DNA from: Ruditapes philippinarum
Taxonomy: Eukaryota
Assembly: GCF_026571515.1 (NCBI RefSeq)
Contig: NW_026862005.1
Location: 124,001 to 188,000 of the forward strand
Length of the DNA: 64,000 nucleotides
Direction: 5' to 3'
This document shows positions 15,198 to 64,000 of this stretch, one piece after another. Positions within the stretch are counted from its first letter, which is position 1, and every line of letters begins with the position of its first letter. Under the pieces are notes generated by a model. It ran no database searches. It saw only the letters and a program-made list of their open reading frames with translations, and was not told where the DNA came from. The position numbers and the translations under genes were made by a program.

Positions 15198-16188
15198 TTT
15201 TTAGCTCGACTTTTCTATGAAAAGGGGAGCTATCCTACTCGCCCCGGCGTCGGCGTCGGCGTTGGCGTCACACCTTGGTTAAGTTTTTCGTACCACCCCA
15301 CTTTATTTCAGAAGTATTACAAGTATGGCTTTGAAACTTACCATACTTGTTCACCATCATAACCTCCATCTACAGACAAGAGTACATAACTCTGTCAAGG
15401 TTTTTGACAGAATTATGGCCCTTTTTTGACTTAGAAAGTGTATTGAGCTTGGTTAAGTTTTTTGTACCACCTCACTTTATTTCAAAACCATTGGAGGTAT
15501 TGCTTTGAAACTGACCATACTTGTTTACCATCACGACCTTCATCAACAGACAAGAGGACATAACTCTGTCAAGGTTTTTGACAGAATTATGCCCCTTTTT
15601 TGACTTAGAAAATACATTGAATATGGGTAAAATCCACTTATTGCCTTAACCCTTTGAGATATTGCTTTGAAACTTTTAATGCTATTTCACATCATTACCC
15701 CATCTGTACGCAAGAGAAGGTAACTCTGTCAAGGATTTGTTTTAAAAATTAAGGCCTTTTATCGACTTAGAATCTTGGTTAAGTTTTTAGTACCAGTCCA
15801 CTTTTTGACTGAACTGTTTGAGATATTAATTTGGAAAGTTGGAATACTTGTTTACCATCATGGTCCCAAAACATGGGCAGGAGAAGGTAATTCTGTTAAG
15901 GATTTTATTTGAATTATGGCCCTTTTTTGACTTAGAAACTCAGTTAAGATTTTCATTCTTGTCCACTTGTTGACTTAACCATTTGAGATATTACTTTGGA
16001 AGTTGGAGTTCTTATGTGCCATCATGAGACCTATCTGTAAGCAAGAGAAGATAACTCTGTGAAAATGTTTCTTGATTTGTACTTAGAAATTCCTAGTTAA
16101 AGTCTTGTGTGCCCTTAACTGTCAAAGTTTTGTTTTATAGGCAAGCACTAAAAAAGTCGAGCGCGCTGTCCTTCTGACAGCTCTTGTT
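15198..16188 (+). mobile_element. HINE/pearl-like element F, ~70 bp after the LRRC72 stop
   Basis: Near-identical full-length copy of element E with unrelated flanks. Confidence 0.88.
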
Positions 16189-20493: not shown

Positions 20494-21405
20494 TTATCTT
20501 GCATCAAAAACAGTTAATTTGTCATCCCATTGGCCTACATACAATTTTGAAGCCTGGTTGTTCATACATAAACACTTTGGATCACGTATATCCCCACCAT
20601 CCTGAATAACTGTTCCAAGTTTCTCCTGCCCACAACTGTCAACTTTAATAACGTTGTCAGATTCAAAGTCGCTGACTAAGACATTACCCTCTGAATCCAC
20701 GCAAAGCCCTTGTGCCTTCTTTAGCCCACTGTCCGTCAGTGTGGCAAGAATTGCACCTGAACTGTCAAAAGTTCTCAATCCTGAACGTTCGTCTGTTACA
20801 TATAATTTAGTTCCATTCTCATTTGTGGCAATATGGCAAAAAGCAGACGACGAAGTACTTCCGGTGTACAGCAATTCCTTTTCCCCGCCATTGCTTGCGT
20901 ATTTCATTATAGAAGAGTCATCAATGACGTATAACTTGCCCCCACAGTGTGTGACTCCGTTACATTTATGTGATAACGTCACTGAACGTGTTATTTTCAT
21001 ACTTCCTTTGCTGTTAACAAAATACAACGAGTTTCCGCCACAAACAACAATCTTGTTGTCATTTTTACCTATACAACACACATCCGAAGGTTGCTCAGGA
21101 AGGTCAATATAGGTAACGAGACCTTTCGGACTTACTTTCTTTAGTCTTTTATTCGTGAAATCTGACAGCACCAGGCAACCGTCTGTTGTGATACAGCATC
21201 CGGTGATGTCACATAGTCTATTGTCATTGTCAACTTTAACATTAAATTCCTTACTTTTGTTAAATATCCTCACAGAAGAGCGATTCTCAGTCACGTGATT
21301 GAATCCAGCAGAACTGTTAATGCCATTTTCGGTGTGTTTTATAACATTTAAGCCCGATGAATTTGGTTTAACAACAACCTTTGTTGAAGATACATTGTGT
21401 CCCAT
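20494..21405 (-). CDS. NHL/SMP-30-like six-bladed beta-propeller protein (TRIM-NHL C-terminal-like, bivalve-expanded family), 303 aa
   Basis: Uninterrupted ORF with propeller-blade motifs (CDITGCCITTDGCLVLSD, PSDVCC, CNGV, LYVTD, AQGLCVDSEGNVLVSDFESDNV, DPKCLC). First ATG is at 21405, with an in-frame TAG 11 codons upstream. Confidence 0.85.
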   Translation of the reverse strand: MGHNVSSTKVVVKPNSSGLNVIKHTENGINSSAGFNHVTENRSSVRIFNKSKEFNVKVDNDNRLCDITGCCITTDGCLVLSDFTNKRLKKVSPKGLVTYIDLPEQPSDVCCIGKNDNKIVVCGGNSLYFVNSKGSMKITRSVTLSHKCNGVTHCGGKLYVIDDSSIMKYASNGGEKELLYTGSTSSSAFCHIATNENGTKLYVTDERSGLRTFDSSGAILATLTDSGLKKAQGLCVDSEGNVLVSDFESDNVIKVDSCGQEKLGTVIQDGGDIRDPKCLCMNNQASKLYVGQWDDKLTVFDAR

Positions 21406-24400
21406 ACTAAACACTATTTCCTTGATATAATTCCTCTATGTATCGCTGTGTAGATGAATAAAAAATACAGTATTGTTTATGAGATTTTTATTCCAATGAA
21501 TATAAATAGTTAAATTCGAACAACCGTCGAACGTTAATTAAAGATTATCACAGGGGCTTTGGATCAGTTCTTTTGAAAGAATCAGCCATTTTGAAACACG
21601 ATCTGATTTGCACTATTTACTCCTTTCAACAAAATAAACAATGTAATCACTTTCTATTGATCGATTTTAAATTACATACACCGAACAAATATATGGACAT
21701 GATTTCGCCCTAACTCCATATGTATACATGTTATCAATAATGTATGGGCTACACATAATCTTCTACGCTATATTTATCGATTACCCTGGGTAGTCAATGC
21801 GCGATGTTTATCTCATAAGCCAGTTACATAATTAATGGTCTTTTATTGTCAATTATTGATAAAATGTGATGACATCATAGAAAATTCCTGTATATGCACC
21901 GTTTCAAATAAGAAACGATGGATTATATTTTGATGATTTTATAACTGTTTTACAAATACCGATTCAGGTTTGATATCTATCGTAATCTTTATTGGGGATA
22001 TGGTTCGACACAGACAACACTTTTGGCAGACATTCGCTTCGAAATAATATTATCATATTATCATGATTATGGACATACATGTAGTTTGTACAAATCTTCG
22101 ATTAAAAAAATAAACAAAAAAAACTTTTGGATTAACCACGGATTTACATTACAATACATGTAATATAAATCCGTGGATTAACTTATTAATTTTTTGATGC
22201 TCATTTACCACATTTTATCGTTAATTATGTAAATTTGAAACTTATTTTATATTTCCCGAGCACGGTATTCGTCCGTATGTCCGACGTCAACAATAGGATT
22301 TTATCAAATATTTTTTGTTGTTTGTTTGATTGCAAAAAAAGCGCAAGACTATTTAAGCGGGATGTTAAAATAATTTAATTCAAGTGAAAGTTAATCGTCC
22401 CTTTCGTAGTTATAAAAAGGCGTGTATGTTATGACAGTTTAAATTTAAGGTATTTTAATAAGATTGCCCCATGTAGTCACTTAAAGAAACTATCCAAAAG
22501 GCTAAAAACATAAATTTTGAATTTCTTTAATTGTTCAGCCAAAAAGATATACAAAAGATAAATTGAAAAATGATTTTTGTGCTATTGTTCTGCTTTGGTT
22601 GTAGGACAATTCTTGTAAAACTAAAATACAAAAAGATGCCATATTTCCTCAATTTATTTTGCAACTATTTCACAGAGTCGTACAATCTATGGCTCTTCAG
22701 AGGAAAGGACATTAGAACAATAACATCCGTGACAGTAATTAATAAACCAATCAATTTTATTGTACACCATGTGACCCTTAATACCCTTAGTTACCTTTTA
22801 ACCAATCAAATTTAATTTCGTGTAATGAAATTTGGAATTATCCAATGAAACAATGTTTACTTTTTACTAAAAGTATTAACTGAAACCCTGAACGTTCATG
22901 ACAAATCATGTTCAGCTTATGGTTACTGATAGTGTTAAAATTACTTTTGCAATATTTACTGCCGAATAATCTGAAATAGGGATTAATAATCTTGTTAAAG
23001 CGATTACAGTAGATTAGATAACTTAGATCTTCCTATCTGTATTTGTTCTTATGATTTCTGTTGTAACATGTTACCGACATTAAAGAGCACGTTAAGAAAT
23101 ATCGATCAGCAAAGTAAAAAATAAAACATTAAGAAATTTCAGCAAAGTAAACAATAAAAATAATAAAATAAATAAATAAATAAATATAAAAAATAAATAA
23201 TAATAATAATCAAAATTTTAATGCATAATACTTTTCTTAGTCCGATTTTAGGGAAAAACGTTGCAACGCTTTTCGATTTTGGATCATTTTTCACAATGAG
23301 AATAATTTTTCTAAAAAAACAACAAAAAACAAACAACAACAACAAACAAACAACAAAAAAAAAACGGAGTGAGCAAATGATCTTAGATTTTGCAGACAAG
23401 TTATTGGTCTAGGACTATATAAAATGGAACATTACTTCCGAACAATTATTTCAAGACCCGTCATGTCAAAAAACCTCAGTGGAGTCCCTTTAACAAATTT
23501 TATTTTTATAAATACTATTGAACGACGTTTGTCGAGTTTTGAAATGCGTTAAAATGGTAAGAATTACCCATTTACATTGACTTTTTTTATCAAAACAATT
23601 CATCATATTCATTGATAAAAACATTGTTCTGGGTCCTATCTATTATAACTCTTTAATGCGGACGACAAATGTGTTAAAATTGAAAAAATGATAATATTGT
23701 ACTAGCACCGCAAAAAATGTTTATATAAATATTGCGTAGAAAAGAACTTATTTTCAAACTATTGGATTTTTTAGTAATAAAGTACACACATAATTATATG
23801 TAGATATAACAAATGATGTCAAAACAAACGTTTTAATTATTGAAAAGTTATAATACACAAACAAATTTAAGAATTTCAAGTAATTAAAACTCCATTTTTC
23901 TTTACTTTCTGGCTCATATACATGATATACCTCAAGAAGAAGATATTAATGCACTATGACCTCTTTGGTATCATGTATATTCGAAACTCGTGCGTTTCCA
24001 CATTGAATTGTCATGTTTACATCTTTGCATTTCAAACATATATAATTTCGAAAATGACCCCTCTTACACCAACAAACATACAAAGAAGAATACATGTAAA
24101 TATCAGAGAAATCTAGAGAAACCTGAAATTAAAAAAAAAATGCTTAAAATTTAATTTCGCGCGGTTGATGATAATCTGTCCCTTGAATCATTATAGGAGA
24201 TCTTTGTATTAATCATTAGCAGCGTGTTCATGAATGACGCCCATGCGATAATGTAAAGGGAAAAAACTGGTATAAATATGAATATTATGATATGGCTGGG
24301 TTGTCTCCCTTCTAATAAAATGTGTCATATTTTGTTACCTATGAAGAAAGCCGCCCGATTCGAATATTTAAACTCACGTATGTTCTTTATTTCTTTATCA

Positions 24401-25710: not shown

Positions 25711-28009
25711 ATCAAGATTTTGCGCCAGACGGATCCGTACCAAAACTCCTTTGAAAACGTTGTCATTTAATTAGAGATTTTCGACCATGCGACCACAGAA
25801 ATATAGGGAAAGTGACCGTGCAACCACTTACACGCATCACAGACCCCCCCCCCCTTTTCTTGTATGAGAAAGGGAAAAGTAGTTGTCCGCCCTTAATTTT
25901 GACTAAAATGCATACTTTAAAATATGCCATTTTCTTACAGTTACATGTATTGATAAGAAGGCCAATTTTCACAAATAAAATATGTCTTGAATTGATTTAT
26001 ATATGACAACCACGGATATACCAAGCGTTTAACAGTTAACGTCCTTTTAATTCCGCTATGAAATTTTAAGAAGATGATATATAAATTTCTTGGAATATTT
26101 TGAGTTTAAAGTTTTTTCTACTTTTCATTTTATGTATAGAACATAATTATATAATTTGCAAGACAGGGACGTTTCAAAAACGTTTGATATGCATTAAAAA
26201 TAAAGATATATTTCACTATTTGTTTTCAAATATTAACGGTTAACCTGAGGGGAGTTTTGTCAAAGTACGAATTTAATTTCTATATTCCACTTATTCTACT
26301 TGTAATAGAAAAGATAATGTGATAGGCTGCAAGAGAAAAAAAAACTTGAGCAGCCGACAATCTGACCCTGATAAGACTATACATATTTTCAAGCTTTATC
26401 TTACCTGCTTGATTTGTAAACTTTACTTTTTCAAGTTCCCATTCTTTTACAATTTTTTATCAATCTGTGCATATCAAGTACAGAGCCGGTTCAGCCTGTA
26501 AAATATGCAGCTGTAATACATGTACCTCTAACCTGGTAAAATCATTTGGATTCCAATAGAATAAAGGTGAAGTGTTGTAAGCAGTGATCATATTTACACA
26601 ATTACCTTTGACCTCAGCTAATTCAAAGTTAAAAAATTCTATTATTCAGTTTTCAATCTCCTTTTATGTACCTGTAGCCAGTGCCTTGAAACTTTCAATT
26701 GTTATATTTTCTAAAGCAATGCGATAGGTGCACAGAAGTTGTAACACTTTTAAATGACACACAGCGAATTTAATTTTGAATCATACCTTAAGTGATGATT
26801 TCATCAATGTATTGATAAAATTGTACTCTGATTGTGGCAAAATAATAATACATATAGTATAATACCTTTAATATCGATAAAACCGCAGACAAACAGGCTT
26901 GTAGGTGAAAGCCAACCCAAAATATAAAAAAAATCTGATCTGAGATTCAATTTTAATTAACACATAAAATCAAGTTTTGTTGACATAATCAATAGCTTAA
27001 TTTTGAAGACCTATAAACTCAAGAAACTCAAGTTACTGTGCCCATGCCAAATTGTGACCCTAAAAAATACATGTACCTAAATTACTTCATATTGACGATA
27101 GATCTGCTGTACAGACATAAGGCCAGCAGACATTATAAAACAATATTACCGTAAAACAACCAAAGAATTAATCATGTATAAATCTATATCAAGCTAGGGC
27201 TACATCCCCAGACAGATCTGAGGAAATTAGCAGGCAATTTGCAGTAAAGGAAGAACTGGAAGCATCATCAAGACAAGGGAAAGAGTTATGTTCTTGACAA
27301 GCTTGTATTTGTTCTTGAAAGTACACAATTATAATTTAATAAAAAAACAACAACAAGCATTACACACGAATAAAGAACAGTTATCAATATGAACAACAAT
27401 AAAACAACATTTTCTCGTCCTCAGGGCATTGTTGACATCTTCGGGCCATTATAATGGCTTAATGGCGAGCTGAAACCAAGAATAAACCTTTAAATATTAC
27501 AGACCTTCCGTCATAGACCAATTTACTTTAATCACTTTAAAGAAGTACTAATAAATATAATACTTGAACATACATTTTGTGATTCCCAATATTCTAGTAA
27601 ACGTACAGATGAAACATATCATATACTGATTTTTCATGAAATAGAATTGAAAAAGATGGACACGTTTTGTTTAAATCACATGTCGGGGCCTCACTTTTCT
27701 CGATGGCATACAGGATTAAATTATTCGGTTAACAGTTAGTCTCAGTTCGTGTAGTTATACAGTCATGCTCTTTTGAACCACACTAATGTCTTTAAATCGC
27801 ATTCATTTTCTCGGCATTTTGAGACTGTAAAGGCATAAATATGCTCACTATTTTACAACAGGGGATTAGAATGCGTCCAAATAATATTCCAGTGATATCG
27901 CGAATTAGATGTCAAGTAAATGAGTGCAAAGTTTTGTTTTTTTGGGTATTAAAACGGAGAAAAGAAGAGTCCCTAAAGAACATGTAAAAACTGACAAATG
28001 TTTACAGGA

Positions 28010-29625
28010 TCTGTTCATGTTCGGTACTTGAACTATACATGGTCGGTACTGAAACTGTTCATGGCCGGTACTGGAGCTGTTCATGGCCGGTGCTAGAGCT
28101 GTTCATGGCCGGTACTGGAACTGTATATGGTCGGTACTGGAAGTGTTCATTGCCGGTACTGGAACTGTTCATTGCCGGTACTAAAACTGTTCATTGCCGG
28201 TACTGGAACTGTATATGGTCGGAACTAGAACTGTTTTTTGCCGGTACTGGAACTGTTCATTGCCGGTACTCGAACTGTTCCTTGTCGGTACTGGAACTGT
28301 TCAGTGCCGGTACTGGAACTGTTCATTGCCGGTACTGGAAGTGTATATGGTCGGTACTGGAACTGTTGATGGTCGGTACTGGAACTGTTAATGGTCGTAC
28401 TGGTACTGATAATGGTCGGTACTATAGCTGTTCAAGGTCGGTACTGGAACTGTTCATGGTCGGTACTGGAACTGTTAATGGTCAGTACTGGAACTGATAA
28501 TGGTCGGTACTGGAACGATTGGTCGGTACTGAAACTGTTCATGGTCGGTACTGGAGGTGTACATGGTCGGTACTGAAACTGTTCATGGCCGGTACTGGCA
28601 CTGTTCATGGTCGGTACTGGAAGTGTACATGGTCGGTTCTGGAATTGTTCATGGCCGGTACTGGAACTGTACATGGTCGGTACTGGAATTGTTCATGGCC
28701 GGTTCTGGAATTGTTCATGGCCGGTACTGGAACTGTACATGGTCGGTACTGGAATTGTTCATGGCCGGTACTGGAACTGTACATGGTCGGTACTGGAGTT
28801 GGTCATGGCCGGTACTGGAAATGTTCATGGCCGGTACTGGAACTGTTCATGGTCCGTACTGGAAATGTACATGGTCCGGTTCTGGAATTGTTCATGGCCG
28901 GTACTGGAACTGTACATGGTCGGTACTGGAGTTGGTCATGACCGGTACTGAAAATGTTCATGGCCGGTACTGGAACTGTTCATGGTCGGTACTGGAACTG
29001 TTCATTGTCGGTACTGGAACTGTACATAATCGGTACTGGAACTGTTCATGGTCGGTACTGGAGTTGTTCAATGGTCGGTACTAGAACTGAATATGGTCGG
29101 TACTGGAACTGTACATTGTCGGTACTGAAGCTTTTCATGGTCGGTACTTGACCTGTACATTGTCGGTACTGGAGCTGTTTCATGGTCGGTACTGGAACTG
29201 TTCATGGTCGGTACTAGAACTGTACATGGTCGGTACTTGAACTTGTTACATTGCCGGTACTAGAGCTGTTCATGGTCGGTACTGGAACTGTTCATGGTCG
29301 GTACTAGAACTGTACATGGTCAGTACTTGAACTGTACATTGTCAGTACTTGAACTGTACATTGTCGGTACTGGAGCTGTTCATGGTCAGTACTGGAACTG
29401 TTCATGGTCGGTACTGGAGTTTGTCATGGCCAGTACTGAAAATGTTCATGGTCGGTATTGAAACTGTTCAAAGGCCGGTACTGGAACTGTACATGGCCGG
29501 TACTGGAACTGGTCATGGTCGGTACTGGAGTTGGTCATGGCCGGTACTGAAAATTTTCATGGCCGGTACTGAAACTGTTCAAAGGCCGGTACTGGAACTG
29601 TACATGGTCGGTACTGGAGCTGTTC
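28010..29625. repeat. 22-bp satellite (CTGTTCATGGTCGGTACTGGAA) x ~70
   Basis: Head-to-tail units with point variants. Confidence 0.95.
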
Positions 29626-39300: not shown

Positions 39301-39610
39301 GCGCATCTGTGCTTTAATAAATTAAGAGCATAATACAAGCTTATAATGTGACGGAATGAAGCGTTTTTATGAAATGTTTTGTAATAAAAGTTACACAAAT
39401 TATAGTGTCTCCCACACAAAACAGTAAATCATTATAACTTATTTATAACCAAAAGGCACATGACTAAATTGCCAACGTTTCGAACAATGTAAGAAAACAC
39501 CAAAAAAAAAATAAAAAAATTAATACATAAATAAATAAAAAAATTAATACCATCAGACAGATGAAAATACATGTAATAGAAATATATGATAGATTATTAT
39601 TACCGTTATT

Positions 39611-40956
39611 TATGGAAGCGTCCTAGTGCCAAACCTGAAATGTTTTTATGTCATAATTAGTAGATAGTAAGTGCTAATTAGTAGAAAGTAAGTGCTAATT
39701 AGTAGATAGTAAGTGCTAATTAGTAGATGCTAAGTCAGAATTAGTAGACAGTAAATACTAATTAGGAGATAGTAAGTGCTAATTAGTATATACTAAGTCA
39801 TAATTAGTATATAGTAAGTACTAATTAGTAGATACTAAGTCATAATTAGTAGATAGTAAGTGCTAATTATTAGATAGTAAGTGCTAATTAGTAGATACTA
39901 AGTCATAATTAGTAGATAGTAAGTACTAATTAATAGATACTATGTCATAATTAGTATATAGTAAGTACTAATTAGTAGATAATAAGTCATAATTAGTAGA
40001 TAGTAAGTACTAATTAATAGATACTATGTCATAATTAGTATATAGTAAGTACTAATTAGTAGATAATAAGTCATAATTAGTAGATAGTAAGTACTAATTA
40101 GAACATAATAAGTCATAATTAGTAGAAAGTAAGTACTAATTAATAGATACTATGTCATAATTAGTATATAGTAAGTACTAATTAGTAGATAATAAGTCAT
40201 AATTAGTAGATAGTAAGTACTAATTAGAACATAATAAGTCATAATTAGTAGATAGTAAGTACTAATTAGTACATACTAAGTTATGACTTAGTATCTACTA
40301 ATTATAACTTACTATCTAATAATTAGTACTTACTATCAACTAATTATGACTTAGTATCTACTAATTATAACTTACTATCTACTAATTAGCACTTACTATC
40401 TACTAATTAGTACTTACTATTTACTAATTATCACTTACTATCTAATAATTAGTACTTACTATCTACTAATTATGACTTAGTATCGACTAATTATAACTTA
40501 GCATTTACTTATTAGTACTAACTATCTAATAATTATTACTAAATATGTACTAATTAGTACTTACTATCTACTAATTATAACTTACTATCTAATAATTAGT
40601 ACTTACTATCAACTAATTATGACTTAGTATCTACTAATTATAACTTACTATCTAATAATTAGTACTTACTATCAACTAATTATGACTTAGTATCTACTAA
40701 TCATAACTTACTATCTACTAATTAGCACTTACTATCTACTAATTAGTACTTACTATTTACTAATTATCACTTACTATCTAATAATTAGTACTTACTATCT
40801 ACTAATTATGACTTAGTATCGACTAATTATAACTTACTATCTACTAATTAGCACTTACTATCTAATAATTAGTACTTACTATCTACTAATTATGACTTAG
40901 TATCTACTTATTAAGAGATAAAAATATTTCAGGTTTGGCACTACGACGCTTCCATA
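39611..40956. mobile_element. Non-autonomous fold-back DNA transposon, possibly IS3EU-type: ~38-bp TIRs, 6-bp TSD GTTATT, inverted 21-bp satellite arms
   Basis: TIRs TATGGAAGCGTCCTAGTGCCAAACCTGAAA / TTTCAGGTTTGGCACTACGACGCTTCCATA; GTTATT at 39605-39610 and 40957-40962; array orientation flips at ~40283. Confidence 0.85.
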
Positions 40957-42307
40957 GTTATTAGACTAATAATAGCAATTTAGCAATTTTGTTTGCACGG
41001 CAATGCATATGATTTTGACTTGACGTCATATGCATTTTATTCTTTAAATTATGTGGCGGTCGTAAAAAGTCGCCACGTACATTTAATCAAAGATGTTATA
41101 CATATATTTTGGATCGTTAAATATCGTTAAGCACGACATGATTGCTGTGTGTGAGTTTGTTGTACTTTTTGTTCTTTCTATTTGATCTGTTTTGTACTGA
41201 TGGGCTGTTCCATTATTCCTATTTACATACTGTATCATCACCCCCAAGGATATGTTGCCAGGGAATGGCACGAACGTGTAACATTGAATGCCCAATGATG
41301 ACCACAGTATGAACATATCATGTTGAATTCTGCTTAAGCCGGTGCAAGGGTGCGGTGCGTGGACGAAAACTTGCGTTTTCCAGTACTGTCCTTGGACAGG
41401 CTCAATCAAAATACTGCACGTTTGTAACGTCGTTTTTTATTGAATAATCGTGACGTTTATATAATTTATATACACTGTTGCTGTCAATTTATGAAGTTTC
41501 TTTTTTTTTCCGGAAACAAAAGTTATTCTTTCGTATATTTTGGCTATTTAAACTTACAGCCATTATTACTATACTGAACCATATAACTTATCAGAAATCT
41601 TTATACTAGTAACGAATAATACAAACGTAGCGTCCAGTCACGCTGAAGAATAAGCGCGTCAAGGAAATGAGATGTACATGCAAGTTTACTATGTATACAC
41701 CTTTAATAACTATATGAAGATGTCAAGTAAAGCTCAGCAAAGTTTTAAAATTCTTGCATGTTAAAAATAAAATTATAACTTTACTAATCTTTAAAATGCC
41801 CCTGCCTCTTGAATATGTTTAAATACATTTTGGTTTAATAAACAATGAATATATTTTGTATAGACTTTAGATAGGTTAAATCGTGCGTACGAATATTATT
41901 AGTAAGTTGAGATATGTAAACAACACATCATAGAATATTGTACAAAAATGCTTGTATAAACACGTTAAAATAAAAACTTTAATAGAACGAATATTCAGTT
42001 GCAATATTAATTTTATCAGTTTGATTCCACCTTTCAGTGTCGTTTGCCTGGAAGCTTGAAGAACTTGTTCACAATTATTTATTGTCTGTTAAATAGATGT
42101 CTTATTTTGAAAAAGACGCGATTTTCTTGTCTGCTAGTTATTTTTTTTTTTAAGAGGTGGTGGGTGGAAGTGGGTGGCAGGTCTGTAATAACGAATCCAA
42201 CTATAAAATACAAGTACAAATACTAAAAACAAACAACTCATATACATAGACAGTATGTTATTATTGTTTTAATTAAGAGATTTAAGTGTAGCCAAATTCA
42301 ATATCAA

Positions 42308-55300: not shown

Positions 55301-57049
55301 AAGTATCTCATTCACTTTTATAGATGCATACAAAACAAAAGTCAGAAGTCATCTCTACAGATTTACAAATCTAAACCAAATTCCTCTTGAACATTTCAAA
55401 ATAGAATTTGGCTCACAGTTCTAATACCCAGCGGAGCACTGTTATCTAATTAGAACACTGTAGTGCGTGTGAAATATCTTATTAGGTTATTGCAGACTAA
55501 GATCATTTAGAATAATCCAAACCTAATACTCCCCTGATTTCCTAGCATTAAGACACTTAAGCTTTGCGAGTCTGTGTGTAACTTGTTGATTAGATAAGGT
55601 TGCAGAACAGTCTGCTGTGTCACACTGGTTGAAGTACTTCCTTAGCAACCACGTCCCTGACTTAAAATTCCTCTCGTTTCTTTACTTATTCACACACAAA
55701 GAAATAAGGAAATGGAATGAGTTTCGTTGCAAAAAAGTTATGTGCTTTTATAATTACATTTTTAATCATCAAATAAAAAATTGACAATATCATAGTCTGG
55801 GTTTTGTGCATTTCGTTTGCTTTGTGTAATTTGATTTAATTTTTGGCAAAAAAAGTGAAATATATGCCTTAACTTATTTGAAAAAAAATCTATTTAATTT
55901 ATAACAAAGTTAGAACTTAGCTAATTGTTTATTCGTATTATTTCAGTAAATGTATTAGTACAACATAAGGACATTTACAATTATTTAAACTAATATGAAA
56001 CTTTTCTGTTTATTTATAGAACTTTTATTTATCATGTTGCTCAATAATTATGCATATCAGTTACCCTATGACTTTGTCGGTCATTAACATTCGCTTTGAT
56101 ACTATTTCTTTCTCTCGTTTCTTATTTAATGTATATTCCCCTGTAAAGACGGTCATTACCATATTTCAATGTGTCGCCAATGACCAAATACGTTTCTAAC
56201 ATTATCCGCTTGACATACGTTCTTGTCAAAGTATATAAGTGTTGGAGTTGTAAATGCACTCCAAGTTAATATACCAATCTAAGAAGACGGTACTGGATTA
56301 CCACATGTTGAATGTCATATATAAAGAGAGAGAAAAGAAACATTATAATCACTAAACCCCTTATAATAGGTGAATAAGAGAAATAACGTCACCAAAGTAG
56401 ATATGAGATAGTCATGAATAAGAGAAACAAAATGTCACCGAAGAAGAAATTAGAGTATATATGCGTATTAGAATACCATAATCTATTGCGATGCATTTCA
56501 ATCATAATCATAGCTGATCTGTATTGTTTAAGTTTTAACAAGCAATTTATCTCAGGTGGACCTGTGCATCTTTCAATCTTGGAAAAGACCATCTATCTAT
56601 CTTTTAAGCGAAAATTGTAATATATGTATTGTCTGAATAGCGAACACAGATTTGCAGATTGAGTTTGTCCTCAACTTGTCACATGACTAGATTCTGTAGC
56701 CGCCTGCATGTTAATGGTTAGAATGATATGCATGTTAATAAGAATATTTGTTAACATTAAAGATTAAAAAAGAAGAAAGACGACAGAGCCTAGTGTTCAT
56801 TATCGATATATATATTCTTTTATCAAAACCAATGCTGCAGAGCAACTGTCCGGTTAGCTCAATAGGTAGAGCGTTGGACTAAATATGATATCTAACATAG
56901 TTTAGAAAACTTACAATTTATTACATCCATATGCATACTAAACCATTAATGTAATAGTACAATAAAGGATTTTAAATGGCTCGTTAATTTGTTACGTCAT
57001 AACCTGATTTTCGAAAATGTTAATCTTGTTTTTATTGTTGTTTTCAGAG

Positions 57050-57144
57050 ATGTTAAAGACATACGTAACTTCAGTGGTTTTGGTTATAGCTTTGGGATTG
57101 ACGACAATCACCTCTGCTAGATATTTACAGGATACAGACGACAG
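57050..57144 (+). CDS. PTH-like precursor coding exon 1 (signal peptide)
   Basis: ttgttgttttcAG acceptor at 57046-57047, ATG at 57050, hydrophobic core VVLVIALGL ending TSA, donor AG|GTATG. Confidence 0.88.
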
Positions 57145-60100
57145 GTATGCCCGACCTTGACCTAATTGTTATATCTATTTATAACGTTTATCAATTTGCA
57201 TCTAATTATAATTTTTATTAATTCTTATAAATGGCGCAGTCCAAAAGTTAGAAATAGTAACCGATTAAATATTTCATGTTTACCAGTTGAAGACTGTGAC
57301 ATCAAGTTGTTTTAACTTGTAAAGATATACATCAAAAGTTTATTAAGACCCCATACGTTTTTTTTTTAATTTTCCAAAGGTAGTATTTTAAAATTACATT
57401 TACATCAAGTTTTATGTGACAGTCATTCTAGATAGATTCGAACCACCATTGATGAAGCGTCTGTTATGTAAATTACATAAGAATATGTAAATGGAAATAC
57501 AATATACAAGAAAGATGTGTTTTGAAAATAAGTATCTTTGTGACACTTGAACTGTTAACAATAATTACTTTCCAATCCATTTTGGTCATATGATTCTTAA
57601 ATGCCATTTCTGTTTAAACATTCATAAACGTTTCTGCCGAATTCCTTTTATGTAAAAATATTTAAATATTGATTTTAAAATAATAAAAAAAATGTTACGA
57701 ATTTGTACTGAATATTGTTTTATTTATATAAAGGTCTTTAGTTGAAACGGTCTTTTCGAATTTAATTCAAGCGGCTTTTTTAATTAAAGGCCATGTCTTT
57801 CAAGTAATACAGAATATACTAAATTGATGAACTGTTTTTCAGAGATAAACGACAAATTGGTGACTTACGCACAGCCGAGTATCTTGCTCGTATCACGCTT
57901 GATAAAAACAAATTGCTACGCTATCTTCAAATGCCATCACATTGCGCTGATATTGCTTGCGGTCTAGTTGACGTTTTTGAAAGGTACAGGCGATGACATT
58001 GGGTGTGGTCAAATATATTTGCCGGTGCCACATGGTTGCATATTGCGATTTTACCTTTGCACTGCATGCGTTACATAAGAGAATGTGCATGATAGACCGA
58101 ATATTTATCTTATATGAATATATTACCTTAAGCATGATTTTTTTTATTTAAATAACTCATTTGCATGCGTCACCTGTAGCATCCGTTGATTATCAAAACA
58201 TTGGCATAATTAATACTGTTACAGTCTTATCCTTAAATCATAACACCACAATGGTCGAATAATTCCTTCATACAGTGAATGACAAAGCCATATTTTAGAA
58301 ATGGAACACCAGCATAAAAGTATATTGAATTGCTTTTTACAGATTTGTAGATTAATTGAAGATAAAAAAACACAAGCTTGAAGAATGATTGAGTACGATA
58401 TTATATCGAAATTCAGTTATAACACAAAAGTCTGTCTGATGATGTATTTTTTAAGGTCAAGCCTAGACTTTTATAAAGGCAAGTGCACCATCGCTGCAAC
58501 GCATTGGCTTAATTGGCCATTTATGTCATAATAGCTTTATTTCTCACATAAAAATATTGTTCTCAATTCAAACAGTCACATAGGGACCCATTAAAGATCG
58601 CGCAACATATTAAGAAAATTGAAAATGTTGCAGACATACAAACATTTATATACATTTTTTAAGAATAAATGCCTTTCCACTCGAATAAGAAAGCTAGATT
58701 CGTTTAAAGATTTGAGTTTTACAGTCTAATGCTCTGAAAATATCTTAAAACATGATAAAAGTATAAACCAATTTTTCAGGAAAAGTTGAACAATCTCCCA
58801 CTGCGCGATGCGAACAGCTTTTTGTCTCTTCTTTATCAACGTGCTGTCTCCAAGGCGACGGCACAATATAAATAAATACATATATTGTTTCTTGCATGCG
58901 TTTTCTTTATTTCATTCATGACAGGAAAACGGTCAAGGCTACTGAATAAAACCCATTTAACTTTTTTGCATGCTTTTTTGTGCAGTTTTGTAACGGAAGT
59001 AGATGAAACTTGTATAATGCATTATACTTTATATTATGTTTTGTTTATGACCTTCATATATATTTATTTAATATAATTATATATATAACCACCATGTTAT
59101 ATAACCTTTGATTTTAAAAGTATGGTGAAGCGGACAATGTCGGATCAGAGGATCGCCGAAATCCAGGCTCTTATTGCCCTCAACAGAGGCCTAGGTGTAC
59201 CAGTAGGTCACGGACTATTTGACCCGAATTATATGTACGTATATAGTGACATCATATGTTTATAACGTTTCAATTGGCCAGTTTCGACATTTAGTTAACT
59301 GTGATCTATATGCTGTTTTTTATCACTTTTAAGATGATTTAAGTACGGAGAGAATTGATTTTAATCAAAAGAGAGATCCTACACGTGAAAATATGAAATA
59401 CAGTAATAGCGTCTTACAATGTTTTGATTCCTTTGATATTATTTTATTGTCGTCTGCTTCGAAATCACATTTACTCCTTTTTCGGTGTTTCAAATTAACA
59501 TAATGTACATTATAATTATGATTATTTTATTTTTCAAAGTAAGTAAGGAATAATTAAATAGGTTAGGAAAAAAATGATGTCAGAGAATAATGCGCACAGC
59601 AGGTACCCGCCATAAGTAATTGCTTTCGTCATCATAAAATATCGGTTCAACCTTTTCAAAATGAGGACTCTCTTGACGGATGGGATAATAAAACATTGTC
59701 ATTTTTCATATTATAAATAACTTTTTTCTTATCATATTTGGTAGAGGTTGACGCGAAAGATGAAACAAATCATCCTTCTTTATTTTTTGTAACGTAATTT
59801 GAAACCTGCAAGGAAAATTGCATCTATTCAAATACGATAGGGACTTTTATCCCCTCACAGTAACGTATAAACTAATATGTCTACGATGTTAGAATATAGT
59901 CAATATACTGTTTTAGAAAAGGTATCAATCACGTGTTTTTTTCCCTAGACAACTTTTTTGCTGATTTATGAACCGATGTGTTTGTTATATCGCAAGTGTA
60001 AGCTTGTTAAGCTTATAAACGTGGTTTAGTATTCAAGAACGAATAGGTACTTATAAGAACATTTTCTATCTTAAAACGCAAAGCATGTTCCAATACTTTA

Positions 60101-62020
60101 TATCCGAGGTTATCGAAGATACACACGTTATTATAGCTAGAAATTTAAATTGCAAGAGACGTGATTTTTATTTATTTGTAATTAGGCCACTATCAAACAT
60201 AAGTCTTCAAAAATTAGTGTTTCACCAGAAATAAATGGCAAGAATCCGTACAAATTTCCACACAGACTGCGACAACTTAACAAGAATTCTTGAGAGCTTG
60301 CCTGCCACCAAGCTGGAAAATTTCGTCTCCAATTTCACGGAAATCCTTTATACACAAGAAAAAAATATTATCATGCTGTATGAATAATTGCCACCATGCG
60401 TGAAAGTCTGAAAAAAAGATAGGTCCATCTGTCCGTGACACATTGATTCATTTTAACGGATAACACTGCAATAAATAAAAACAATATAGGAAATGGCGAT
60501 AAAGAAGTTATTACGATACAAAACTAAATCATATTTCTAGGTTTTTTTAATTGAATATTTTATATATATTGGTATCAGTATCTGTTTAAGGAATGCCAAT
60601 TTCAACAGTACCACTTAAGGCGTCTGTGAAATTCATTAATTCCTATGTCACGTGATAATAAAATCTTTAGACAGTAACAGTAGTTAAAATTGAGATAGGT
60701 ATTTTCTACGCTAAATTTGTATCTTGAACACTTTGTGCACTTTATCACACGGGTGAGAAATGATATAATCAGGAAAACAATAATTGTATTATGAGCAAAA
60801 AGAAATTTTGAGATAAATTTATTGATAATTTTAGATAATTGACCAAAATGATGATGGTCTCCTTAACAAGTAAAGCAAATACCAAAAAAGATATATAGTA
60901 AACAATGAAAATGATATTTTCTGAACCGGTGTTTTTTTCCCCTTTTTTTAATTTCACTAAAGATACAGTGTTTCAGGTATAACAACCCATTCAAACACCC
61001 ACACATTCACACATTCACTCATATTGTTTTCATCATTAAATTACATTGTTTTCATCCAAAATTAATAGATTAAGTAAGAACTTGACATTCGGTGTATTTA
61101 TGTTTACAAATAAGCTAAATATTTTTTTATTTATATAATATTTTTAATAATTTGTAATTTATGTATACGTTATTGCACGAGCACATCAAATTTTTAAAAC
61201 GTATAACTTTGTTTATTTGTCAATTTCAAACACATACAAATTACGTGAATGGCATGTGTTGAATGTTAAATCCTATGCATGTTTATATACCCGTATATCA
61301 TTAGTTTTATCACATCAAATTTCATAATAAAATTTTAAAGGACATTTTGTGTCTGATTTTATTTTACAAATCTTGTTTATGTTATAAGACTTTATATTGT
61401 ATTCACTGAATTAAATATATGATATGTAATGTATATGAAATAATGATAAATATATGATACATTGGTCTACGTTTACAAAATAAATGTTAAAATGAATAAT
61501 ATGTATTATAAATGAAACGTCATATGTATCCAATTTAAGAGTATCATGTTTTATAAGAACACGTGAGTAAATTTCAACACGTTATAAATGCACAATATGA
61601 GAAAGATTCTTCACCTATTCCCTTTCATTTTCCAATTTTCTCAAGTTTTCTAAAGGATGGTAACATTTTAAAGTTCATTTACAATTTCAATTTTATACTA
61701 TCAAATACAATTTCATATCAAAATAATTTAGTGGTATATGAAGAAACAATGTCGTGGTTTCTTCTTGCTGTTTAGTTATGTATATATTTGTCAACCAACA
61801 AAACAATTATGAATTATCATAACTAAAAACGCCTTTGTATCACTTTGATACTTTCATATCTTCAATATATACTTTATCTTATTGAAACACTTATGTACAT
61901 TTTAGCGGCAAGCGCAAGAAAAGATCTCTGGACTCGGTGTTTAATGGCCTAAGTGATGAGCAGAAATACAGATTATCAAACATTTTACTTTCTTCTGCAA
62001 GAGATGACCAATATTCATAA
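57050..62020 (+). CDS. Parathyroid-hormone-like neuropeptide precursor (iPTH / PXXXamide family), 107 aa; join(57050..57144,59121..59234,61906..62020)
   Basis: Splices to MLKTYVTSVVLVIALGLTTITSA-RYLQDTDDSMV-KR-TMSDQRIAEIQALIALNRGLGVPVGHGLFDPNYI-G-KRKKR-SLDSVFNGLSDEQKYRLSNILLSSARDDQYS*. It has a signal peptide, dibasic sites, an amidation Gly, and the DQRxAE..ALI / GxG..DPxxIG family motifs. Both introns are GT-AG, phase 2. Confidence 0.9.
59121..59234 (+). CDS. PTH-like precursor coding exon 2 (mature peptide)
   Basis: AG at 59119-59120; GC-rich island encoding KR-TMSDQRIAEIQALIALNRGLGVPVGHGLFDPNY; donor GTACGT at 59235. Confidence 0.92.
61906..62020 (+). CDS. PTH-like precursor coding exon 3 (G-KRKKR + C-terminal peptide)
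   Basis: ttttAG at 61904-61905; completes the Ile codon, then GKRKKR; TAA at 62018-62020. Confidence 0.88.
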
Positions 62021-64000
62021 CGACGGGGTCTTAGAGGTTATCATACTTATAAAAAATATTATTTGTACGACCAAGTATAAGATTTTGTTTTGCATTTCGT
62101 TAATCAATAAATAGTAGGTATTAGAACGAAAATATTGTATTCAGATGAAGAAAATGTTGGTATTAAGTAAGTGCTAAATGAGTTGGTTCACCAAATATTT
62201 TTCATTTAGATTTTCTTCTTTTACTAAGATATGAAAAAATAAGTGAGATTAAGTAATCTTATTGGTGAATTACATTACAATATGATATTACAGGAGAAAA
62301 GAAATAAGTTAATTAGGATTATATCAACATATTGTCAAATTACTTATTCAGAAACACTTGTCACTATAAAATCACTGTAAATGTATAAAATTAAATCTTT
62401 TCTATTTCAGATTCAACGGCGTTCGTCTCCGTCCTGTCATAAACTACATTTTTAAGAAAATTCACTAAAAACTCTAAAACAAGTTCTGACAATTATTTTG
62501 AGATCATGTGACCTGGAGCTGACAATAATGTACGTGTTCTTAGACGACAATCAACAATATCGACACAGCTATGATCATAGAAGAGCTACACTTTCATCAA
62601 TGCAATATAATTTAAAGAAACTCTATGATGGATAAAACATCTCTTAACGAAATGTACATGTATGTTAAAAGAAGAGCTAAGGGGACAAACATTGACAAGA
62701 CCAAAAATCAAATTAGATTGTGAATGCTTCACAAAAATGTCAATTTAATTATATCGATGTATATTTTTATCTTATTATTATTTAATACCATGTAATCGCT
62801 TTATCTTAAATTATTTATTACTTTTATGGTATATCTGAATTTTGGAATAGTGTGAAGACAACAGTAAAATAAACAAATTGAAAAAAATGCGGTTTTGTCT
62901 TTTTTATGTAAAAGAAATTGATCATGATAATAAACATATACTAGTATATCAGTAACATCATAGTAACGTAAATCTGTTTAATGAAGGTTCATCCTCCATC
63001 AAGTCATCGAGTTCGCATCTCGGGACTGTTATTCTCTTTCAAGGGTTTGATCTTGAAGCATAAATTAGTGAGATGTTACCTCTGTATAATTTTACACAGA
63101 GTGAAAGCCAAATATATTAATTTTAAGCCCATTGTATATCACTGAACAGAAGCTAATTGGAACCTAAACGTACCGTAACCTATAACAATAAAAAAGGAGG
63201 TAAATAGCCCCAATAAGAATTGTTATGAGCTAAATGCCTGCCTTTCAAGGAGTCTTTGTAATAAAGGCTTCCTTCCTAGTCGTGCCTGTCTTTGTAGGAC
63301 ATCTCCCATCGCCTTCAGTCAGAACATTGTCGTTGCAAGGTCTAAAAATCTTCTACCGGTTCCACCGTGTATATCCAGTAACGCAGGAATGTGCAAATAA
63401 CACAGAATGGTGCGAATCAGTGGCTAAAACGAGCACCGCGATAAGAAAATGGACCAATATTTTTTACAGTACAATGAATTAGCGCATATGGCTCTCGAGA
63501 CATTATACTATAAACCTCATCAAAAATATTTTCATGTTAATTTTTCAAGATCATCCGTGAAAATGACGACCTGACTAGCGTATTGATGGCAATTTTTATT
63601 TTCGTTGATATCTTTAAATACAATTACGTACATGTTACTTTATGATTTTTATATGCCTTGTACCTGAGACATTTTCCAGTCTACTCGTGTTATATTACAG
63701 TTAATTTAGCAGATAATTGACGTAATTGTGACCATTTTTACGAGGTAACGCCGAATTCGTGAATGAAGCACTGAAGCAACGCCGGTTATCTCATAAAAAG
63801 TAGCTAAATCTTATTTTACCAGCTTCCTTCTATTGTTATACGCACTTGTAGTTTGACAAATGTCTTAGGTAGATCTATATATAATATGAAAAAATAATGT
63901 TTTAAATGTGTTAAATGTACATATTTATTTGACGAAAACACAAAAGTCACCTTCAAAACGGTAATCAGGTTGTATTTCTCACGAATGATCTAAAGAAGTA

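What the first reader, a model, noticed from the sequence alone, without database searches (positions are those of the whole stretch)
57050..62020. Hidden three-exon PTH-like neuropeptide gene yielding a 34-aa amidated peptide
Seen: three exons of 95-115 coding nt, all below the ORF-track cut-off, splice into a signal peptide, KR, TMSDQRIAEIQALIALNRGLGVPVGHGLFDPNYI, G and KRKKR. Known: the DQRxAE..L..L and GxGxxDPxxI-amide pattern characterises protostome PTH-like peptides (insect iPTH, cephalopod PXXXamide), ligands of PTH-receptor-like class B GPCRs. Inference: this is a bivalve PTH-type signalling ligand. A role in calcium handling or shell formation is attractive but untested.
Basis: partly seen in the sequence, partly recalled or inferred. 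Interest (0 to 1): 0.85.

Follow-up and report, generated by a model that had tools for sequence, protein, structure and literature searches.

The report
Manila clam QSamide/PXXXamide (iPTH-type) neuropeptide gene

Summary

The gene is not hidden. The exon translations match RefSeq XP_060557091.1 letter for letter (LOC132717613 isoform X1, Ruditapes philippinarum, "uncharacterized protein").

It encodes a paralogous peptide with a cysteine loop, the "QS-type" peptide. Isoform X2 skips the PXXXamide exon. The QS-type exon then joins the last exon directly, and the last exon supplies the Gly-Lys-Arg amidation signal.

It does occur in short, necessarily intronless contigs of a close relative, and in published oyster, limpet and octopus transcripts.

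Family membership is solid:
- The invariant S-D-Q-R-x-A-E...G-x-G-x-x-D core is present.
- The amidation glycine is invariant.
- Exon 2 alone gives E down to 1e-18.

The same gene architecture was published for Crassostrea gigas and other lophotrochozoans. I found no sequence similarity to vertebrate PTH.

Receptor pairing is inferred only, and the shell or calcium role is speculation. I could not obtain RNA reads.

Verdict: a new member of a known kind, of modest interest.

The parts
57048..57049 (+). Acceptor-like site (gttttcag|AG) 2 nt before the ATG. It suggests an untranslated 5' exon further upstream, which I did not locate.
   Evidence: Sequence. This is an inference; no RNA data were available.
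57050..57144 (+). Coding exon 1: ATG, a signal peptide (n-region with K3, hydrophobic core, T-S-A before the predicted cleavage site) and the start of the propeptide. Donor CAG|gtatgc, phase 2.
   Evidence: residues 1-31 of P0025, exact. The A|R[YF] cleavage context is conserved in orthologues.
57843..57983 (+). It encodes D-KR followed by a QS-type peptide: N-terminal Gln, the core G-D-x-R-x-A-E-Y, and a C-x4-C-G-L-V-D disulfide loop. Its splice sites are the strongest in the gene (ttttcag|A, AAG|gtacag).
   Evidence: Exact match to residues 33-78 of P0025 and P0028. Homologous to the exon 2 module: hhalign probability 93%, E 2.5e-7.
59121..59234 (+). PXXXamide/iPTH-type peptide exon of 114 nt, phase 2-2. 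It encodes MV-KR plus 33 residues of the 34-residue peptide that ends P-N-Y-I. Its splice sites are weaker (ttaaaag|T, TAT|gtacgt), and it is skipped in RefSeq isoform X2.
   Evidence: residues 80-116 of P0025. phmmer E down to 9.6e-19. Invariant D, Q, R, A, A, G, D columns.
61906..62020 (+). Last coding exon. Its first base completes the final residue of whichever peptide exon precedes it. It then encodes Gly (amide donor), KR-KKR, a 31-residue C-terminal associated peptide and TAA.
   Evidence: residues 118-154 of P0025; 80-116 of P0028. The Gly is the only invariant column across 16 family members.
62106..62111 (+). AATAAA, a candidate polyadenylation signal 86 nt after the stop codon.
   Evidence: Pattern match only.

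Best explanation
This is the single-copy Manila clam (Ruditapes philippinarum) gene for the lophotrochozoan QSamide/PXXXamide proneuropeptide, which is the orthologue family of insect iPTH.

Gene layout:
- A shared first coding exon supplies the signal peptide.
- A shared last coding exon supplies the Gly-KR-KKR amidation and cleavage signal plus a C-terminal peptide.
- Between them lie two paralogous peptide exons of 141 and 114 nt. Both are phase 2-2 and multiples of three, so either or both can be included without breaking the frame.

Products by splice form:
- Both exons included (RefSeq X1): a non-amidated Cys-loop 'QS-like' peptide plus the amidated 34-mer ending PNYI-amide.
- 114-nt exon skipped (RefSeq X2): the Cys-loop exon meets the last exon, and its peptide becomes C-terminally amidated (Q...S-amide).

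Shown here: the exon anatomy, identity to the RefSeq proteins, family homology, duplication of the peptide module, and single-copy status.

Inferred:
- Prohormone-convertase cleavage at the KR sites.
- Amidation, pyroglutamate formation and the disulfide bond.
- Secretion from neurons.
- Action of the PXXXamide peptide on a cluster-B (PTH/glucagon/secretin-receptor-like) class B GPCR, by analogy with Tribolium and Ixodes.
For: -
- The four exon translations are exact substrings of P0025 (XP_060557091.1) in the order 1-31, 33-78, 80-116, 118-154, and the junction residues R, S and I equal the split codons. P0028 (XP_060557092.1) lacks only the 114-nt exon.
- Four-exon orthologues exist in Mercenaria, Mya and Dreissena.
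- A close relative has both the QS-only form (P0029) and the PXXXamide-only form (P0030) on contigs of at most 1045 bp. The locus here spans about 5 kb, so those contigs must be spliced.
- Family homology reaches cephalopod, gastropod, nemertean and insect proteins.
- The two modules are homologous to each other.
- Only this locus in the 1.41-Gb assembly matches the protein or the family profile.
- Literature: the same alternative-exon architecture is published for C. gigas, Lottia, Octopus, Sepia, Lingula and Phoronis (PMC7224569 Table S1; PMC8398477). The oyster peptides were detected by mass spectrometry. iPTH activates PTHR-like receptors in Tribolium (PMC7224569) and in a tick (bioRxiv 10.64898/2026.06.22.733765).
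Against: - The isoforms therefore rest on RefSeq models, plus one Logan record of X2.
- I could not pinpoint a PTHR/cluster-B-type receptor in this genome. Four class-B TM3 exons all matched calcitonin receptor best.
- Receptor activation by a lophotrochozoan peptide had not been shown as of PMC8557429 (2021), and I found no later report.
- The AlphaFold model is low confidence (pLDDT 60).
Confidence: 0.88

Rival explanations
1. One reading: a three-exon gene whose only product is the 34-residue PNYI-amide peptide, with exon 1 spliced directly to 59121.
For: The frame is preserved (the ex1|ex2 junction codon is S). A close relative has exactly this form on a 974-bp contig (P0030). Oyster, Lottia and Octopus have published PXXXamide-only transcripts. 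Scallop and Mya gene models (P0006, P0008) join these exons directly.
Against: Both RefSeq isoforms of this species contain the 141-nt exon, which has the better splice sites. No protein of this species with the three-exon form appeared among the candidates, although it would share all of exon 1 with the query. As the sole product this model is excluded by X1 and X2. As one additional isoform it remains plausible.
Confidence: 0.45
2. The principal hormone of this gene in heterodont clams is the Cys-loop QS-type peptide, acting on its own receptor. The PXXXamide peptide is the accessory product.
For: Among Ruditapes, Mercenaria, Mya and Dreissena the QS-type exon is 39-44/46 identical, against 24-28/37 for the PXXXamide exon. 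It is present in both RefSeq isoforms. It has the stronger splice sites. Scallop QSamide was confirmed by mass spectrometry (PMC5996578).
Against: No receptor is known for any QS-type peptide. Higher conservation may reflect structural constraints of the disulfide loop. Across phyla the PXXXamide module is the better conserved one (rows P0001 to P0019).
Confidence: 0.3
3. The peptide regulates calcium handling or shell formation, as vertebrate PTH regulates calcium.
For: The evidence is by analogy only. Cluster-B receptor transcripts occur in bivalve mantle (PMC7200681). Tribolium iPTH knock-down affects cuticle maturation (PMC7224569).
Against: [quoted passage not shown] In oyster the transcripts are in visceral ganglia, digestive gland and gonad, and the PTHR orthologue is female-gonad-specific, so those authors propose a reproductive role (PMC8398477).
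Confidence: 0.12
4. Chance open frames, or a decayed pseudogene.
For: None beyond the small size of the exons.
Against: Exon 2 alone gives E 1e-10 to 1e-18. All four exons are intact with canonical splice sites, and they are identical to an annotated protein. Orthologues are conserved across four bivalve orders or families.
Confidence: 0.01

Closest known systems
Crassostrea gigas QSamide3/PXXXamide gene (Realis-Doyelle et al. 2021, PMC8398477; also 'C. gigas gene 1' transcripts in Table S1 of Xie et al. 2020, PMC7224569)
   Same: The first and last coding exons are shared. Alternative peptide exons give a Cys-loop Q...S-amide, a PXXXamide, or a non-amidated QS-like peptide plus a PXXXamide. 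The last exon donates Gly and basic residues. The peptide cores are the same (Q-x-A/G-D-x-R-x-A/S-E... C-x4-C-G-L-V-D, and S-D-Q-R-x-A-E... H-G-x-x-D-P).
   Different: The clam has one PXXXamide exon, whereas oyster has several (PYKI, PALI, PIKI). It has one gene, whereas oyster has three QSamide-type genes; this is within the sensitivity. The clam QS-type peptide carries an extra stretch of about 10 residues before the first Cys, shared with Mercenaria, Mya and Dreissena. The oyster peptides were seen by mass spectrometry and the clam's were not.
Insect/tick iPTH (Tribolium castaneum, Xie et al. 2020; Ixodes ricinus preprint 2026)
   Same: The precursor layout is the same: signal peptide, dibasic site, a peptide of about 34-41 residues, Gly plus basic residues, then a C-terminal extension. 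The S-D core, the A-[ED]-[LI]-Q helix and the G-x-G-x-[IF]-D-P-x-x-I-G ending are conserved. Schistocerca P0010 was hit at E 9.6e-6, and the Tribolium sequence was read.
   Different: The arthropod genes listed carry no Cys-loop QS-type exon. Receptor activation is demonstrated there, not here.
Vertebrate PTH/PTHrP/TIP39 (Pfam PF01279)
   Same: The only link is the presumed receptor class: family B1 GPCRs of the PTH/glucagon/secretin group. The N-terminal half of the peptide is predicted helical, at low confidence.
   Different: No detectable sequence similarity. Vertebrate PTH is not amidated, and its gene has no alternative peptide exons.
Vertebrate calcitonin/CGRP gene (CALCA)
   Same: It works alike. 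One gene with a shared signal-peptide exon uses alternative exon choice to deliver different class-B-type peptide hormones.
   Different: The sequences are unrelated. In CALCA the alternative exons carry their own 3' ends, whereas here a common last exon provides the amidation signal.

Membership tests
iPTH / PXXXamide / QS(G)amide proneuropeptide family | N-terminal signal peptide, followed by a dibasic site directly before the peptide | tested here: met
   K3, a 17-residue hydrophobic core, T-S-A before the predicted cleavage site, then KR before T-M-S-D-Q. The A|R[YF] context is conserved. SignalP was not available, so this is judged from sequence and alignment.
iPTH / PXXXamide / QS(G)amide proneuropeptide family | Conserved N-terminal core S-D-(Q)-R-x-A-E of the mature peptide | tested here: met
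   D8, Q9, R10 and A12 are invariant, and S7, E13 and L14 are at least 90% conserved across 14 sequences from molluscs, a nemertean and an insect.
iPTH / PXXXamide / QS(G)amide proneuropeptide family | Strictly conserved C-terminal Gly plus basic residues (amidation and cleavage signal) | tested here: met
   One search shows G-K-R-K-K-R. This Gly is the only invariant column in the 16-sequence alignment.
iPTH / PXXXamide / QS(G)amide proneuropeptide family | Pro at position -4 from the amidated end (mildly conserved, per Xie et al. 2020) | tested here: met
   The peptide ends D-P-N-Y-I.
iPTH / PXXXamide / QS(G)amide proneuropeptide family | Significant sequence similarity to published members | tested here: met
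   One search gives E 9.6e-19 to 1e-3. The hits include the Octopus, scallop and nemertean proteins, whose congeners are listed as PTH-family sequences in Table S1 of PMC7224569. The correspondence to that table was judged by eye, not by a tool.
iPTH / PXXXamide / QS(G)amide proneuropeptide family | Lophotrochozoan gene architecture: an alternative Cys-loop (QS-type) exon sharing the first and last exons with the PXXXamide exon | tested here: met
   Exon 57843-57983. Isoform X2 = P0028. Module homology by hhalign at 93% probability.
iPTH / PXXXamide / QS(G)amide proneuropeptide family | Transcribed, spliced and processed to the mature amidated peptide | not tested
There are only RefSeq models and a Logan record of X2.
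iPTH / PXXXamide / QS(G)amide proneuropeptide family | A PTHR-like (cluster B) class B GPCR in the same genome | tested here: inconclusive
   The genome has at least 31 HRM exons and many 7tm_2 hits. The four class-B1-like TM3 exons I tested all match calcitonin receptor best in the PDB, so no PTHR-type gene was singled out.
iPTH / PXXXamide / QS(G)amide proneuropeptide family | Activates a PTHR-like receptor | not testable with these tools
   Shown only for Tribolium (PMC7224569) and Ixodes (preprint). Still open for lophotrochozoans according to PMC8557429.
Vertebrate parathyroid hormone family (Pfam PF01279) | Match to the Pfam model, or to PTH/PTHrP chains of solved structures | tested here: not met
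   No Pfam family at E<=10 for P0025, P0028 or either peptide exon. The family profile finds no PTH-type chain in the PDB at E<=10.

The most novel reading that the evidence does not exclude
The gene acts as a splice-controlled switch between two different hormones. The choice between the two phase-2-2 exons decides which peptide lies next to the shared Gly-KR exon, and therefore which one is amidated. In heterodont clams the Cys-loop QS-type peptide is more conserved than the PXXXamide and carries a lineage-specific insertion of about 10 residues. It would be the main ligand, with its own receptor among the expanded and still orphan cluster-B (or A) class B GPCRs.
Probability: 0.25. Interest if true: 0.5.

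Novelty: new member of a known kind. Interest (0 to 1): 0.27.

Why it matters
This gives a functional name to a RefSeq 'uncharacterized protein' (LOC132717613) of a major aquaculture clam, and to its unnamed orthologues in Mercenaria, Mya and Dreissena. It also lays out the full exon logic of the locus.

No receptor has yet been shown for any lophotrochozoan member of this family. The two clam peptides are therefore ready-made candidate ligands for de-orphanising the expanded cluster-B receptors of bivalves.

It does not reveal a new kind of signalling system. The family, its link to PTHR-like receptors and the alternative-exon architecture are all published.

Tried and rejected
- Joined spliced model. 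All searches used single exons by reference, and full-length comparisons used the database proteins P0025 and P0028.
- Further peptide exons or paralogues. tblastn of the exons against the window, plus a scan for phase-2-2 AG..GT frames, found only 57843-57983. Whole-genome searches with P0004 and with the family profile found only this locus. Short, diverged exons could still escape these searches.
- Receptor. HRM and 7tm_2 searches gave many loci. PDB phmmer of four TM3 exons (C6508, C6138, C2353, C12342) gave calcitonin receptor as the best hit each time. My initial guess that C6508 was PTHR-like was therefore rejected, and the route was dropped as not discriminating. Full-length receptors could not be retrieved, because the search for homologous proteins filters by length and the genes have many exons.
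- Complex prediction was not run, because I had no receptor sequence.
- Vertebrate PTH homology: rejected.
- Structure. The AlphaFold2 model of P0025 has pLDDT 60 and pTM 0.23, too weak for a fold search. I use only a helix at residues 85-101, and only as a hint.
- ESM Atlas. The nearest clusters are assorted neuropeptide precursors, all scoring under 0.9. This fits a prohormone but is not evidence of family membership.
- Literature. I found no paper naming this peptide in Ruditapes and no later lophotrochozoan receptor de-orphanisation.
Full report
**Observation**

- Exon 1 is 57050-57144. It starts with ATG and ends at CAG|gtatgc with two bases left over.
- Exon 2 is 59121-59234. It lies between ttaaaag| and |gtacgt, is 114 nt long, and is phase 2 in and 2 out.
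- Exon 3 is 61906-62020. It follows ttttag| and ends in TAA.
- The split codons give S and I.

The conceptual product is as described: a signal-peptide-like N-terminus, KR, a 34-residue peptide ending D-P-N-Y-I, then G-K-R-K-K-R and a 31-residue tail. The window contains no N.

Every search used one exon by reference, and whole-protein comparisons used database proteins.

**Reality of the gene**

Exon 2 alone (37 aa), scored by phmmer against 1.84 billion representative proteins, gave 23 hits at E<=1e-3. Four were at E<=1e-10, and the best was 9.6e-19.

The hits are small secreted precursors from:
- bivalves (Mizuhopecten, Mercenaria, Mya);
- Octopus;
- a land snail;
- the nemertean Lineus;
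- the locust Schistocerca.

In their alignment D8, Q9, R10, A12, A19, G31 and D34 of the exon 2 translation are invariant.

**A fourth exon, and the species**

Reading the sequence there shows ttttcag|AGATAAACGA...TTTGAAAG|gtacag. This is an open 141-nt segment at 57843-57983 in phase 2-2.

A search with the Mercenaria orthologue P0004 returned two relevant proteins:
- P0025 = XP_060557091.1, 'uncharacterized protein LOC132717613 isoform X1 [Ruditapes philippinarum]';
- P0028 = XP_060557092.1, isoform X2.

A script showed that the four exon translations are exact substrings of P0025 at residues 1-31, 33-78, 80-116 and 118-154. Residues 32, 79 and 117 (R, S, I) equal the three split codons. P0028 has exon 1, the 141-nt exon and exon 3, but not exon 2.

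So the window is Manila clam. The gene is annotated but unnamed, and it has at least four coding exons. An acceptor-like ttttcag two bases before the ATG suggests an untranslated exon further upstream (inference). AATAAA lies 86 nt after the stop.

**What the extra exon encodes**

It encodes D-K-R followed by a peptide with these features:
- it begins with Q-I-G-D-L-R-T-A-E-Y;
- it contains a C-x4-C-G-L-V-D loop;
- its N-terminal half resembles the exon 2 peptide, and its A-C-G-L-V-D aligns with the G-H-G-L-F-D of exon 2.

A profile-profile comparison of the two modules, cut from alignment A2, gave hhalign probability 93% and E 2.5e-7. The two peptide exons are therefore ancient duplicates.

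**Splice forms**

Both exons are multiples of three with the same phases, so any combination keeps the reading frame.

| Form | Exons | Products |
|---|---|---|
| X1 (RefSeq) | both peptide exons | Cys-loop peptide followed by S-M-V-K-R, so not amidated; then the 34-mer, which is amidated |
| X2 (RefSeq) | 141-nt exon only | junction codon is S and the next codon is the shared Gly, giving a Q...S-amide |

The shared last exon therefore hands its amidation signal to whichever peptide exon precedes it. That Gly is the only invariant column in a 16-sequence family alignment.

It is not among the proteins on record for this species. The query shares all of exon 1 with it and would have recruited it.

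It is nevertheless very likely a genuine isoform type:
- A close relative has both a QS-only protein (P0029, contigs <=1045 bp) and a PXXXamide-only protein (P0030, contig 974 bp). The locus here spans about 5 kb, so those contigs must be intronless, meaning transcripts.
- Table S1 of Xie et al. 2020 lists one-peptide transcripts of both kinds for Crassostrea, Lottia, Octopus, Sepia, Lingula and Phoronis.
- In the clam the 141-nt exon has the stronger splice sites, and exon 2 the weaker ones (AAG acceptor, T at donor -1). This fits exon 2 being the exon that is skipped.

**What is already known**

- PXXXamide was described in Sepia.
- Xie et al. (PMC7224569) showed that the beetle orthologue activates the insect PTH-receptor orthologues and renamed it iPTH. 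[quoted passage not shown]
- Thiel et al. (PMC8557429) equate iPTH/PXXXamide with the lophotrochozoan QSGamides. They note that receptor activation in lophotrochozoans remains to be shown.
- Realis-Doyelle et al. (PMC8398477) describe the C. gigas QSamide3/PXXXamide gene with the same differential splicing. They detected the peptides by mass spectrometry. They found expression in visceral ganglia, digestive gland and gonad, and proposed a reproductive role because the oyster PTHR orthologue is female-gonad-specific.
- Scallop QSamide was also confirmed by mass spectrometry (PMC5996578).
- A 2026 tick preprint repeats the ligand-receptor pairing and uses a Mytilus sequence for comparison.
- I found no paper on this peptide in Ruditapes.

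**Tests of 'PTH-like'**

No Pfam family, including the vertebrate PTH family, matches P0025, P0028 or either peptide exon at E<=10. The family profile finds no PTH, PTHrP or TIP39 chain in the PDB. The label therefore rests only on the receptor shown in arthropods.

**Receptor in this genome**

The assembly has at least 31 HRM-domain exons, including a tandem array of at least 10 on contig C12342. It also has many 7tm_2 hits, most of them intronless adhesion-type ORFs.

Four class-B1-like TM3 exons all matched calcitonin receptor best in the PDB. I therefore could not single out a PTHR/cluster-B gene. The literature reports that cluster-B receptors (homologues of the glucagon/PTH/secretin receptors) are expanded and orphan in molluscs and are expressed in mantle (PMC7200681).

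**Copy number and conservation**

Only this locus in the 1.41-Gb assembly matches P0004 or the family profile. Oyster has three genes.

Among heterodont bivalves the QS-type exon is better conserved than the PXXXamide exon: 39-44 of 46 residues against 24-28 of 37. It also carries about 10 extra residues before the first Cys, compared with cephalopod, gastropod and scallop. Across phyla the PXXXamide module is the better conserved one.

The AlphaFold2 model is weak (pLDDT 60). It shows helices over the N-terminal halves of both peptides and over the C-terminal tail.

**Verdict**

- The calcium or shell idea has no support.
- The finding is a new, unnamed member of a known family with a known architecture.
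- The open question worth testing is whether the two alternatively amidated peptides address different class B receptors.

No splice junction was verified with reads.

Noticed in passing
window 118-154 of P0025 = 61925-62017: The C-terminal associated peptide (31 aa after KRKKR) has a motif, [DN]-E-Q-[KR]-Y-x-L...L-L, that recurs in gastropod, nemertean and brachiopod precursors. It is predicted helical with pLDDT about 70. It may be a further product or a sorting domain.
   Followed up: partly
window 20494-21414 (-): This is the only long ORF in the window (306 aa). It hits NHL repeat and SMP-30/gluconolactonase-like beta-propeller models just above cut-off, so it is possibly an exon of an NHL-repeat gene.
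   Followed up: partly
window 28003-29625: A 22-bp satellite of about 74 copies at 82% match. It produces the only GC-rich block in the window (44.5% against about 31%) and spurious ORFs of 140-175 aa.
   Followed up: no
window 13365-14315; also 2184-5694, 9983-10769, 15274-16026: A very homogeneous 38-bp satellite (25 copies, 97% match), and several arrays of a repeat family of about 165-174 bp. The pair 9983-10320 and 15274-15611 is nearly identical and flanks the 38-bp satellite.
   Followed up: no
window 39650-40913: Two abutting arrays, of period 42 bp and 21 bp, lie within the fold-back element that another note of this scan (s1-804637) places at 39605-40962. I did not examine them further.
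   Followed up: no
G000:C12342:133656-259611: A tandem array of at least 10 HRM-domain (class B GPCR ectodomain) exons, each in an open frame of 150-190 aa, with a 7tm_2 exon at 259417-259611 whose best PDB match is calcitonin receptor. It looks like a lineage-specific expansion of secretin-family receptors. These are candidates when looking for the receptor of these peptides.
   Followed up: partly
G000, e.g. C3582:11064-11804, C6979, C4418, C10251, C8924: Dozens of intronless 7tm_2 ORFs of 500-750 aa, often in clusters on one contig. They appear to be an expanded adhesion-type or other non-B1 family B GPCR repertoire.
   Followed up: no
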